From Saccostrea cucullata (taxonomy: Eukaryota), in assembly GCF_032062105.1 (NCBI RefSeq), contig NW_026934719.1, positions 1 through 61,396 of the forward strand: 61,396 bases of DNA, in the 5' to 3' direction. This document shows, in pieces, positions 47,033-49,633 of the stretch (positions are counted from its first letter, which is position 1; each line of letters starts with the position of its first letter). Under the pieces are notes generated by a model, which searched no databases, was not told where the DNA came from, and saw nothing but the letters and a program-made list of their open reading frames with translations. The position numbers and the translations under genes were made by a program.

Positions 47033-48139
47033 TAATAATATTGCTCTACAATACCGTTTAACGTCACCATTTTTTACAATGTCTAATTCAAAGCGCTTTG
47101 GTATATATTGTCATATATCTGTCATTAATAATGTCAAATAAATGAAATTTTACACACAAGTAAACCAAATCATAGAGTATATATGTGAGTATTTTTTTAA
47201 CGTTATATTGCCATATAGCCCGATAACAACGAAAAAGTTAATCACAATGTTATTCGTAAAAAGTAAAAAAAAATTGTCTTGCGCCGACCATCGATATTCA
47301 ACGTCAAATAAATGTTGTTTTCATATGCATATAACACAGACCTATAATATTTTGTCAGAATATCTAGAAGATAATTTCCCAACAGCATGCCAAAAAATAT
47401 TAGTTTTGGTTCAAAAGTATTTGAAATATTCAAAAAGTTCGCGTTTTTTCCTGGACAATCCTCGTATTTAAACTTCATATTTGTCCACGTCCATCCGGAA
47501 CCTGTACCAGATAGATGAGCAATGTATACCAATGTATAATATACTGTTGAATGTAATAGTTTTCTATTGTCACCTTTGAACTAAAATATTTACATTTCCA
47601 ATGTCTTTGTCCGAGATAACATTACAAATAGTAAATGAACTTTATTTCCCCATCAATGTATTGGTTCATCAATAGGCGTGGTTAAAAAAGTCACGTGCAG
47701 GACGGGACAAATAGCTAGACAGATGCAGGGCTTGGAGCACGTGGATTGGCGGAATCAAACGCATGTAAATATAAGGAATACCTGTCAGATTTTTCAATTT
47801 CATGACTATGATCATTAGATTAACTTGCTTGATAATTTTATGCATCACGCAAGCCAATAGATTGATCACATCATGGAATCGAAAAATAAGAGTTATTCCT
47901 TAAATGCATGCTTTTTAACGACTTAATGTGTACAATTTCATCCGGACGAAGGGTGCGTTACGTCCTGTGTTAGGATCTCGATCAGAGACGTTAGGGTCAA
48001 CTCCTTCTACCTTCCTCTCCGACTCTGCAGGTAAAACGTTAAACACAGCAAAAATTGTAATCTGGAGTATATACCTTAAATATTAATATATTAGATGCTA
48101 AATACATATCGATATAAATGACTAATTTATTTATTTTAG

Positions 48140-48982
48140 ATGAGGTTTATAATGATTATGATTCTACTGCTGTCTTTTAATTCTTTTGCTCGAGCACAAA
48201 CCCCAACAAAACCATGCGTCTGTTTACCCTACGGAACTTGTCGCTGTGCCCGGCTGGTCAGGGTAAGCGAAATATTCTTGTCACAATTTCATCATTATCT
48301 TTAATCAGTTAGTTATCAAGCATAATACAGCATAAAATCATCCACAATCTAAACAGTCATCAAATATATATTATAGGTATTTGGGGTCTACAATCGTTCT
48401 GTAGGCTGTCAAATTTATCGAAAAAGGATTTTCTTGAAAAAAAAATGTTTTTAAAATAATTATTATTTTATACGTCATTTACGGCAAAATTTCAAACCTT
48501 TGTTTAAATGTTACATATCTTGGAAAAATTCGTATTTGTATTTTAAATTTCTAATGTAATATGAAAAATACATTTCTGTAAAAAATCTATTTGATTAAAA
48601 AAATACTTCCTAAGGCAAAAATGCTGGACAAAATTACTTTCGTAACAAATATAACGAGCCTTTTCAATATCTATTTGACTACGAAGTTCTTTTCGCTAGA
48701 TATTTCATTTTCCTCAGTTAAAACTATTTTATTTCAGAATTCTGCTGAAAATTTCAGGGAATTGCAAAAAAGAGTAAGTTTGACTTTTTTACGGTTAAGT
48801 CATGAATGATGGATATTTTTTTTAATCATATATGAATCAAACTTGCCTTCTTCAAGATACTAGTGTTTTGGGTTTTTTTTTAAAGTAAATGAAAGTATAG
48901 ATACATTTACTTTGTATTAAAAAACTATATTATATTTGTTTTTATTTAGATGGACACAATGATCGATTCAGAAACTGTTTGA
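48140..48982 (+). CDS. Family-A gene A2: 51-aa secreted precursor with CVC-LPYGT-CRC hairpin; exons 48140-48262 and 48950-48982
   Basis: ttattttag|ATG, then MRFIMIMILLLSFNSFARA-QTPTKPCVCLPYGTCRCARLVR|gtaag ... tatttag|MDTMIDSETV*. AATAAA at 49027. Candidate upstream non-coding exon ends cag|gtaaaa at 48030. Too short for the ORF track. Confidence 0.82.
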
Positions 48983-49633
48983 AAAGACCCTCCTATGCAG
49001 TGTGAGAAATGTTCCTTGAGACTTAAAATAAAACATATATAGGAAAACACATTGTGTCTATTTCATATGCTTTATTTTATTCTTCATTTCATTACGATGT
49101 GAATGAGATTGAACACCAGGTAAAGATTAAACTAGCCCTATTTCTACAACACGGTCAAGGTAAATAGACACTGTACTTATAAAGTAAACTCTGTAGGAAA
49201 AAACAAGAAAAGGGGAGCAAAATACAATAAAGTACCGGTTTGGAAATATAAACAAAAATGACAAACTTATATTACATGACAGTGTGAAACGTTCAAATAA
49301 AACATTTATTTTGTTCATGTTGTTCAAACATGTACTGCTTCAAATATTTAAATAGATATATATTTTTGATATTGTGTCCATGGTGAGTAATACCCTATTA
49401 TAATAATTCAAGTTCAGAAATCTGATAATAATCAAATAAATAAACGTTTACTTCAAAAGTAAATTTCAGGGAGATGTATTTTTGACAAGAACAACATAAT
49501 GGTCAGCATCATCAACAAAATAAATACAGTAGTTACATTTAGGCGTTTCTGATAATAACTGGTTACATGTATACACGTAAGTCTGCCATCAATTTATTTT
49601 CATTTTTTCTTAACTGATAATGAATACTGTTAC

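What the first reader, a model, noticed from the sequence alone, without database searches (positions are those of the whole stretch)
48030..49032. A2: 51-aa microgene with a protegrin-sized CVC-LPYGT-CRC hairpin
Seen: below the ORF-track cutoff, yet it has a hydrophobic leader ending A-R-A, a following Gln (possible pyroglutamate), four Cys, a phase-0 GTAAG intron after LVR, an acidic last exon starting MD and an AATAAA. This matches the A1 architecture. Its charge is far lower than A1, so it may have a different target such as a protease, receptor or channel (inference).
Basis: partly seen in the sequence, partly recalled or inferred. Interest (0 to 1): 0.75.

Follow-up and report, generated by a model that had tools for sequence, protein, structure and literature searches.

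The report
Oyster small secreted disulfide-hairpin peptide gene
This looks like a tiny oyster gene for a secreted peptide pinned into a hairpin by two disulfide bonds, one of a small, apparently oyster-only family built like mussel defence-peptide genes, but whether it is switched on and what it does remain untested.

Summary
Four lines of evidence say it is more than chance. (1) The genome holds three more full copies, with exons 91-95% identical and introns 54-76%. (2) The exon borders are significantly similar at DNA level to A1, 11 kb upstream. (3) The combined feature set occurs 3 times in the window and 0 times in 100 shuffles. (4) AlphaFold2 puts strands on CVC and CRC.

The 51-aa model is probably incomplete.

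The evidence against is substantial. No RNA run was listed, so no junction could be tested. No relative turned up in any protein, structure or metagenome search. The three other copies each carry a defect; one has Cys to Ser.

Best reading (0.5): a secreted two-disulfide hairpin precursor, host-defence-like, with the gene layout of mussel myticalins. The scan had already noted its paralogue A1 in this window.

The parts
47583..47912 (.). Interspersed repeat of about 330 nt just upstream of the gene (context, not part of the gene)
   Evidence: query positions about 100-430 of 47483-48139 match many contigs at 80-90% identity. The first look found 2311 candidates, of which 40 were scored. Matches on both strands point to an internal inverted repeat.
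47913..48030 (+). Candidate non-coding first exon. Its 3' end is CTGCAG|gtaaaa at 48030; its start is unknown.
   Evidence: Searches show the donor. The stretch is kept in L002. It is homologous in L003, but there the GT is CT. No RNA evidence.
48031..48139 (+). Candidate intron 1 (109 nt), ending tttatttattttag directly before the ATG
   Evidence: The AG before the ATG is also present in L002 and L003, in A1 and in B2. It is absent in L004.
48140..48196 (+). Signal peptide (19 aa), with predicted cleavage after A-R-A
   Evidence: AlphaFold2 helix at residues 2-20. The cleavage site follows the -3/-1 small-residue rule (inference; no predictor was run).
48197..48262 (+). Hairpin peptide (22 aa, net +4): QTPTKP-CVC-LPYGT-CRC-ARLVR, ending in an R-x-x-R motif at the exon end
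   Evidence: Strands at residues 26-28 and 34-36. Identical in L003 and L004 except Q20E and V40L. pN/pS 0.09-0.36, from few changes.
48263..48737 (+). Intron A, with donor AGG|gtaagc in phase 0
   Evidence: Only 70% and 54% identical to L003 and L004.
48738..48773 (+). Candidate 36-nt micro-exon (NSAENFRELQKR), flanked by tattttatttcag| and |gtaagt, in frame, ending Lys-Arg
   Evidence: It is 94% identical to L003 and L004, and 36 of 36 among L003, L004 and L004b, against 54-76% in the flanking introns. L002 has a 1-nt deletion and GTTAGT. Not tested by RNA.
48774..48949 (+). Intron B, ending ttgtttttatttag
   Evidence: 75-76% identical to L003 and L004.
48950..48982 (+). Last coding exon: MDTMIDSETV plus TGA (net -3)
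   Evidence: Frame and stop position are kept in all 5 copies that have it. The acceptor and exon start resemble A1; 0 of 2000 shuffles reach the score.
48983..49032 (+). 3' UTR up to AATAAA (49027-49032)
   Evidence: AATAAA is kept in L002 and L003 and changed in L004 and L004b.

Best explanation
A2 is a small three- or four-exon gene of an oyster-restricted family (A1 and A2 types) that encodes a secreted propeptide.

Shown by sequence:
- a candidate non-coding first exon, with an intron ending right at the ATG;
- one exon that carries the signal peptide and a 22-residue cationic peptide with C-x-C...C-x-C, ending in R-L-V-R;
- a conserved 36-nt in-frame exon candidate ending K-R;
- a last exon with a short acidic tail and the 3' UTR.

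Inferred mechanism:
- The leader is removed after A-R-A.
- The four Cys form a two-rung disulfide ladder (outer pair 26-36, inner pair 28-34) that locks a beta-hairpin with an L-P-Y-G-T turn.
- A furin-type convertase cuts after R-x-x-R and/or K-R and removes the acidic tail.
- The released hairpin acts outside the cell, most likely in host defence. That rests on the gene layout, which matches mussel myticalins, on the clustering with the Arg/Trp-rich A1, and on the tandemly duplicated, copy-variable locus.
- Its low charge and weak amphipathicity suggest binding to a defined target rather than plain membrane lysis.
For: - All features are present.
- The exon has 4 copies in the genome. Conservation is exon-specific: exon 2 is 95% and 91% identical to L003 and L004, the micro-exon 94% and 94%, and the last CDS 85% and 88%, against 70% and 54% for intron A and 75% and 76% for intron B.
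- The mature part shows pN/pS 0.09-0.36.
- Paralogy with A1 at three exon borders.
- R-x-x-R ends the hairpin exon in all 4 A2 copies and in 2 of 3 A1-type copies.
- AlphaFold2 gives helix 2-20 and strands 26-28 and 34-36, with mean pLDDT 68.7.
- The feature scan gives 3 real hits and 0 in 100 shuffles.
- Passages of PMC5577615, section 2.2, describe the myticalin genes: a 5'UTR-only first exon, an intron right before the ATG, a second exon with signal, mature peptide and basic site, and a last exon with the anionic tail and 3'UTR. That is the same layout.
- The locus lies in duplicated units of roughly 18-20 kb that also hold B2- and A1-type pieces.
Against: - There is no expression evidence. 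The look-up of sequencing runs listed no RNA run, so no junction was tested.
- No relative was found outside this genome. The 4 HMMER hits are repeat ORFs or unverifiable.
- Every other copy has a defect. L002 has Cys28Ser, a micro-exon frameshift and GTTAGT. L003 has the homologous 5' donor changed from GT to CT and an insertion of about 570 nt before the ATG. L004 has no AG before the ATG, lacks the first-exon stretch and has AATAAA changed.
- Synonymous divergence in the exons is also low (pS 0.07-0.23). Gene conversion or recent copying could therefore explain part of the exon conservation.
- Net charge is only +4, and the peptide is conserved rather than diversified among copies, unlike most antimicrobial peptide families.
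- The AlphaFold2 confidence is moderate and rests on a 4-row alignment.
Confidence: 0.5

Rival explanations
1. The gene is real and the hairpin is secreted, but it is not an antimicrobial. It would instead be a signalling ligand, a protease inhibitor or a toxin-like binder with a specific protein target.
For: - The mature peptide is nearly invariant among diverged copies, while the tail changes fast (5 non-synonymous and 0 synonymous changes between A2 and L003 in the last exon).
- Net charge is only +4 and GRAVY is -0.08.
- The R-x-x-R and K-R sites resemble prohormone processing sites.
- The PYG turn is invariant.
Against: - There is no amidation signal (no Gly before the basic site).
- No similarity to any known hormone, inhibitor or toxin family.
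- It is paralogous to, and clustered with, the strongly cationic Arg/Trp peptide A1.
- A copy-variable tandem locus is more typical of defence effectors.
Confidence: 0.2
2. A2 is a silent or decaying member of a birth-and-death family. It would be an intact-looking relic that is not, or hardly, expressed, with its exons kept similar by recent duplication or gene conversion.
For: - No RNA holder was listed, and no protein from this locus appears in the collections.
- All 3 other full copies, plus 2 fragments (L004b, L029), show defects.
- pS in the exons is low.
- A high-copy repeat sits directly upstream.
- Passages of PMC5577615 report unexpressed pseudogenes in the comparable myticalin family.
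Against: - The A2 copy in the window has every signal intact.
- Exons are far better kept than introns even between copies that are only 54-76% identical in their introns.
- Frames and the stop position are kept in all copies.
Confidence: 0.25
3. A chance ORF with chance splice-like motifs.
For: It is short (41 codons), lies in AT-rich DNA, and has no outside homologue.
Against: - 0 of 100 shuffles give even one such feature set.
- There are four copies with exon-specific conservation.
- It is significantly similar to A1 at the exon borders.
Confidence: 0.03

Closest known systems
A1, the Arg/Trp hairpin microgene in the same window
   Same: - AG acceptor abutting the ATG.
- One exon holding the leader and a C-x-C...C-x-C peptide, ending R-x-x-R|GTRAGC in phase 0.
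- Last exon starting tttatttag|ATGGAC, with an acidic tail.
- Significant DNA similarity at all three borders.
   Different: - A1 has a Thr/Ser-rich spacer after the leader, a 13-residue Arg/Trp loop and a charge of +11.
- A2 has no spacer, a 5-residue LPYGT loop and a charge of +4.
- No in-frame micro-exon candidate was found in the A1 intron.
Myticalins, linear cationic antimicrobial peptides of Mytilus (PMC5577615; passages read)
   Same: - Gene layout: a 5'UTR-only first exon, an intron right before the ATG, a second exon with signal, mature peptide and basic cleavage site, and a last exon with the anionic tail and 3'UTR.
- A multigene family that includes pseudogenes.
   Different: - Myticalins lack Cys and are Pro/Arg/Tyr-rich.
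- Their second intron is in phase 1, against phase 0 here.
- Their tail is 35-75 residues, against 10 (or 22 with the micro-exon).
- No sequence similarity was detected.
Gomesin-type spider hairpins (PMC11678162; passages read)
   Same: - Signal peptide followed directly by a short four-Cys, two-disulfide beta-hairpin with N-terminal Gln (pyroglutamate), then a negatively charged C-terminal part.
- A small gene.
   Different: - Gomesin precursors carry an amidation (PAM) site and a tail of about 40 residues.
- A2 has no Gly before its basic site and a different Cys spacing.
- Arthropod, not mollusc. No sequence similarity.
Protegrins (pig cathelicidins) and the tachyplesin, polyphemusin and arenicin-type hairpins. 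Cys spacings are recalled, not from a call; the class is described in PMC10608444 (passages).
   Same: Size of about 2-2.5 kDa, and two antiparallel strands tied by two disulfides. The C-x-C...C-x-C ladder is the protegrin pattern (recalled).
   Different: - There is no cathelin or BRICHOS pro-domain (Pfam: 0 families).
- The precursor has the mature peptide before, not after, the pro-part.
- The charge is lower.

Membership tests
Oyster A1/A2 hairpin microgene family (defined within this scan) | AG acceptor directly before the ATG, and a leader plus C-x-C...C-x-C peptide in one exon | tested here: met
Oyster A1/A2 hairpin microgene family (defined within this scan) | Hairpin exon ends R-x-x-R|GTRAGC in phase 0, and the last exon starts tttatttag|ATGGA with an acidic tail | tested here: met
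   DNA similarity to A1: 4 of 2000, 0 of 2000 and 4 of 2000 shuffles reach the observed scores.
Myticalins | Three-exon layout with a 5'UTR-only first exon and an intron right before the ATG | tested here: inconclusive
   The sequence fits and matches the passages read. The first exon is not confirmed by RNA, and a fourth (micro) exon is likely.
Myticalins | Cys-free, Pro/Arg/Tyr-rich mature peptide; conserved myticalin signal peptide; phase-1 second intron | tested here: not met
   A2 has four Cys and a phase-0 intron. No myticalin appeared among the hits.
Gomesin-like peptides | Gly plus basic amidation site after the mature peptide, and gomesin Cys spacing | tested here: not met
   There is no Gly before R41 or before K-R. 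The precursor description comes from passages; the gomesin Cys spacing is recalled.
Cathelicidins (protegrins) | Cathelin pro-domain N-terminal to the mature peptide | tested here: not met
   Pfam returned 0 families. The leader is followed directly by the hairpin.
BRICHOS-linked hairpin peptides (arenicin, nicomicin, capitellacin) | BRICHOS domain in the pro-region | tested here: not met
   Pfam returned 0 families. The precursor is only 51-63 aa. The family description comes from passages.
Disulfide-stabilised beta-hairpin host-defence peptides (functional class) | Two antiparallel strands cross-linked by two disulfides | tested here: inconclusive
   AlphaFold2 gives strands 26-28 and 34-36, with pLDDT about 65 in that part. 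Disulfides were not modelled or measured.
Disulfide-stabilised beta-hairpin host-defence peptides (functional class) | Antimicrobial activity and expression in immune or mucosal tissue | not testable with these tools
   No RNA run was listed.

The most novel reading that the evidence does not exclude
Oysters make a family of protegrin-like C-x-C...C-x-C two-disulfide beta-hairpin peptides that arose independently of the pig, arthropod and annelid hairpins. The family uses the myticalin-type bivalve gene scaffold. A2 is a low-charge member with a conserved turn that has moved from membrane attack to a specific molecular target. The mollusc section of the 2023 review read here (PMC10608444, section 2.4) lists no such hairpin class for molluscs, and the motif search in papers found nothing.
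Probability: 0.3. Interest if true: 0.65.

Novelty: new variant of a known kind. Interest (0 to 1): 0.45.

Why it matters
If the gene is expressed, it would give oysters a compact two-disulfide hairpin effector that their published antimicrobial repertoire, as listed in the review section I read (defensins, BPI and a plasma-derived peptide), does not include.

It would also show the same gene scaffold (a non-coding first exon, a single exon for signal plus peptide, and an acidic tail exon) carrying very different peptides in mussels and oysters.

The A1/A2 pair offers a natural contrast on one fold: +11 with an Arg/Trp loop against +4 with a PYG turn. That is useful for working out what makes a hairpin lytic rather than target-specific.

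The mix of intact and damaged copies on separate contigs hints at presence/absence or null-allele variation in an immune-type locus. This could matter for oyster disease resistance.

Tried and rejected
The junctions stay untested.
- Outside relatives. Six searches gave nothing usable:
  - The word-indexed protein search with exon 2 found none. With the A1 exon it also found none.
  - The HMMER profile of the 4 exon-2 peptides against 1.84 billion representatives gave 4 hits. P0001 and P0002 are tandem-repeat ORFs. P0003 is a repeated SIPYGTIK ORF. P0004 is a 70-aa singleton from one 1922-bp contig with two EIPTKTCVCVPY-like stretches. P0004 matches nothing relevant in this genome (best E 1.94), so I treat it as chance or unverifiable.
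  - The ESM Atlas gave no usable hit.
  - Pfam gave 0 families.
  - PDB sequences gave 1 hit at E 1.3, which is not significant.
  - The metagenome scan matched 89 pattern stretches, of which 1 was confirmed (L031). L031 is a 52% GC bacterial signal peptide that shares only AQTPTKPCV, so I rejected it.
- More family members.
  - The acceptor/last-exon pattern gave 7 exact hits. Four were already known. The 3 new ones (L032-L034) are an unrelated repeat.
  - The one-mismatch hits (22 forward, 26 reverse) are fewer than the backwards control (66, 52), so they are chance.
  - L005 is chance.
- No equivalent micro-exon was found in the A1 intron. My first scan also missed the A2 micro-exon, because its pyrimidine threshold was too strict. 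One search loosened it.
- Rfam found nothing in 33000-61396.
- Coding read-through from the candidate first exon is rejected. The upstream ORF (47928-48086) reaches the candidate donor at 48030 one base out of codon register, whereas the acceptor abuts the ATG. I did not translate the joined read.
- I did not build, fold or search the joined (spliced) protein. The pN/pS totals over several exons are sums of per-exon counts.
- Supplementary files of papers were not opened. Those of PMC5577615 might hold oyster searches that bear on novelty.
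Full report
THE OBSERVATION. The window is AT-rich (32% GC) and has no N. At 48140 an ATG opens a 54-codon genomic ORF. Its first 41 codons (48140-48262) read as follows:
- a hydrophobic leader ending A-R-A;
- Gln, then TPTKP;
- C-V-C, L-P-Y-G-T, C-R-C;
- A-R-L-V-R.

GTAAGC follows in phase 0. At 48950 the acceptor ttgtttttatttag precedes ATGGAC, and the exon reads MDTMIDSETV plus TGA. AATAAA lies at 49027-49032.

Two further features fit a gene. An AG acceptor abuts the start codon (tttatttattttag|ATG). A possible donor, CTGCAG|gtaaaa, lies at 48030, where the finding begins.

IS IT MORE THAN CHANCE? Yes, on four grounds.
- Feature scan. I scanned for AG|ATG, a hydrophobic leader, at least four later Cys and an in-frame GTRAG donor. 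The real window gave exactly three hits: A1 at 36562, A2 at 48140, and B2 at 42422 on the minus strand. The reversed sequence gave none, and 100 local shuffles gave none. The criteria were chosen after seeing A1 and A2, so this is a control, not a blind test.
- Other copies. The window's own genome (1.17 Gb, 23,869 contigs) holds three more copies of the exon at E <= 1.7e-17: L002 and L004 on contig C22316, and L003 on C9993. A fifth match (E 0.96) is chance.
- Exon-specific conservation:
  - A2 against L003: exon 2 is 117/123 identical and the last CDS 28/33, while intron A is 349/502 and intron B 152/203.
  - A2 against L004: exon 2 is 115/126 identical, while intron A is 309/573.
- Amino-acid conservation. 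Frames and the stop position are kept in all copies. The mature 22 residues differ only by Q20E and V40L in L003 and L004, with pN/pS 0.09-0.36. That rests on one to four changes per class, so it is indicative only.

A MISSED EXON.
- It is 36 nt long, in frame and free of stops. It reads NSAENFRELQKR.
- It is flanked by tattttatttcag| and |gtaagt.
- It is 34/36 identical to L003 and L004. It is 36/36 among L003, L004 and the partial copy L004b, while the flanking introns are 54-76% identical.

I therefore think the precursor more likely has 63 than 51 residues (about 0.65 against 0.35, an inference). The hairpin is the same in both models. With the exon, a Lys-Arg site precedes the acidic decapeptide. 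No such exon candidate exists in the A1 intron.

RELATION TO A1. A1 (36562-36765 plus 37450-37489) has the same plan. Local alignments of the three border regions beat shuffles:
- acceptor plus leader: 4 of 2000 shuffles reach the observed score;
- hairpin-exon end plus donor and the first 20 intron bases: 4 of 2000;
- acceptor plus last exon: 0 of 2000.

The hairpin exon ends R-x-x-R in all four A2 copies and in two of the three A1-type copies found (A1, L015; not L016). A2 and A1 are therefore paralogues. The R-x-x-R at the exon end is a candidate furin-type site (inference).

THE COPIES AND THE LOCUS.
- Synteny. C22316:85939-96754 is collinear with window 58782-47854 at 93.5% identity. C22316:78592-84302 is collinear with window 46218-40522 at 93.3%. 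The order of the two blocks differs from the window.
- Other pieces. An orphan A1-type last exon lies at 57420. A second partial A2 copy (L004b; micro-exon and last exon only) and an orphan last exon (L029) also exist.
- The picture is a tandemly duplicated array of units of roughly 18-20 kb that carry B2-, A2- and A1-type pieces. Its contigs may be diverged haplotypes or paralogues. I cannot tell which.
- Only the window's A2 has every signal intact:
  - L002 has Cys28Ser, A19G, a 1-nt deletion in the micro-exon and GTTAGT.
  - L003 has CT instead of GT at the place homologous to the 48030 donor, and about 570 nt inserted before its ATG.
  - L004 has CG instead of AG before the ATG, lacks the 47483-48125 stretch and has AATAAA changed.
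- Window 47583-47912, just upstream, is a high-copy interspersed repeat of about 330 nt (2311 first-look candidates).

STRUCTURE. AlphaFold2 was run on the exon-2 peptide with the 4-row alignment. It gives a helix at 2-20 (the leader) and strands at 26-28 and 34-36, exactly on CVC and CRC. Mean pLDDT is 68.7, and about 65 over the hairpin. This agrees with a two-rung ladder hairpin but is moderate-confidence. The peptide has net charge +4, pI 9.3 and GRAVY -0.08. The A1 hairpin part has charge +11.

EXPRESSION AND OUTSIDE RELATIVES.
- No RNA run was listed for 47900-49100. The tool's text says this does not show silence. Read laying could not be used.
- No relative was found by the word-indexed protein search, the ESM Atlas (31), Pfam or PDB sequences.
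- The HMMER search gave four hits: two repeat ORFs, one repeated-motif ORF, and a 70-aa singleton (P0004) that has no counterpart in this genome.
- The metagenome scan gave one confirmed locus out of 89 pattern stretches. It is a bacterial signal peptide.
'Oyster-only' therefore rests on blanks from collections that rarely hold such short eukaryotic genes.

COMPARISON WITH WHAT IS KNOWN.
- Myticalins. Passages of the myticalin paper (PMC5577615, section 2.2) describe a first exon that is 5'UTR only, a short intron right before the ATG, a second exon with signal, mature peptide and dibasic site, and a last exon with the anionic extension and 3'UTR. They also report unexpressed pseudogenes. A2 has this layout, but with four Cys, a phase-0 intron, a much shorter tail and no sequence similarity. 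It is not a myticalin.
- Gomesin. Gomesin-type precursors (passages of PMC11678162) share the order signal, four-Cys hairpin with N-terminal Gln, acidic tail. They carry an amidation site that A2 lacks.
- Other hairpin classes. A 2023 review lists beta-hairpin peptides from horseshoe crabs and polychaetes (passages). Its mollusc section, read whole, names no two-disulfide hairpin class. A full-text search for the A2 motif found 0 papers. Three keyword searches listed no oyster hairpin family; I saw only the listings and abstract starts. The protegrin Cys pattern is recalled from memory.

VERDICT.
- Best reading (0.5): a secreted two-disulfide hairpin propeptide of a small, apparently lineage-restricted family, host-defence-like.
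- Rivals: a secreted hairpin with a specific non-antimicrobial target (0.2), a silent or decaying copy (0.25), and a chance ORF (0.03).

The scan had already noted and followed up the paralogue A1 and the neighbour B2 in this same window (s1-710887, s1-710942). A2 itself had not been followed up.

Noticed in passing
window 1-33000: A tandem array of about nine units of about 3.75 kb, 91-100% identical (spacings 3725-3781). It fills the first half of the window.
   Followed up: no
window 57420-57462 (context 57150-57560): An orphan A1-type last exon (MDKISDTELDSAE) with its acceptor and 3'UTR, but with no hairpin exon found upstream. It looks like the 3' part of A1 carried along in the next duplicated unit.
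   Followed up: partly
window 47583-47912: A high-copy interspersed repeat of about 330 nt with an internal inverted repeat (2311 first-look candidates genome-wide). It is inserted just upstream of the candidate first exon of A2.
   Followed up: partly
L016 (G000:C23659:117693-117881): A third A1-type copy with a Trp-rich loop (WCLCSYRWWWWRFWRWCPC) and an MRF start like A2. Its exon end does not give an in-frame GTRAG donor, so it may be broken.
   Followed up: partly
L003 reverse strand, about 590-680 nt (G000:C9993): A palindromic stretch of about 70 nt (MITE-like) lies inside the roughly 570-nt insertion that separates the homologue of the A2 first intron from the ATG in this copy.
   Followed up: no
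window 49635-50870 and 46901-47004: Long inverted repeats. One set has arms of 80-108 nt, 71-86% complementary, 635-1076 nt apart. The other is a 44-nt hairpin pair, 95% complementary, 16 nt apart. They are probably foldback or MITE-type elements flanking A2.
   Followed up: no
P0004 (70-aa protein from one 1922-bp contig): It holds two stretches that resemble the start of the A2 mature peptide (E 4.7e-5 in the HMMER search). It has no counterpart in this genome, and its origin could not be examined.
   Followed up: partly
G000:C22316:75650-76330 (L004b) and G000:C15010:30477-30608 (L029): Partial A2 copies. L004b keeps an intact micro-exon and last exon without the hairpin exon. L029 keeps only the last exon (MDKMVNSETV) and the 3'UTR.
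   Followed up: partly
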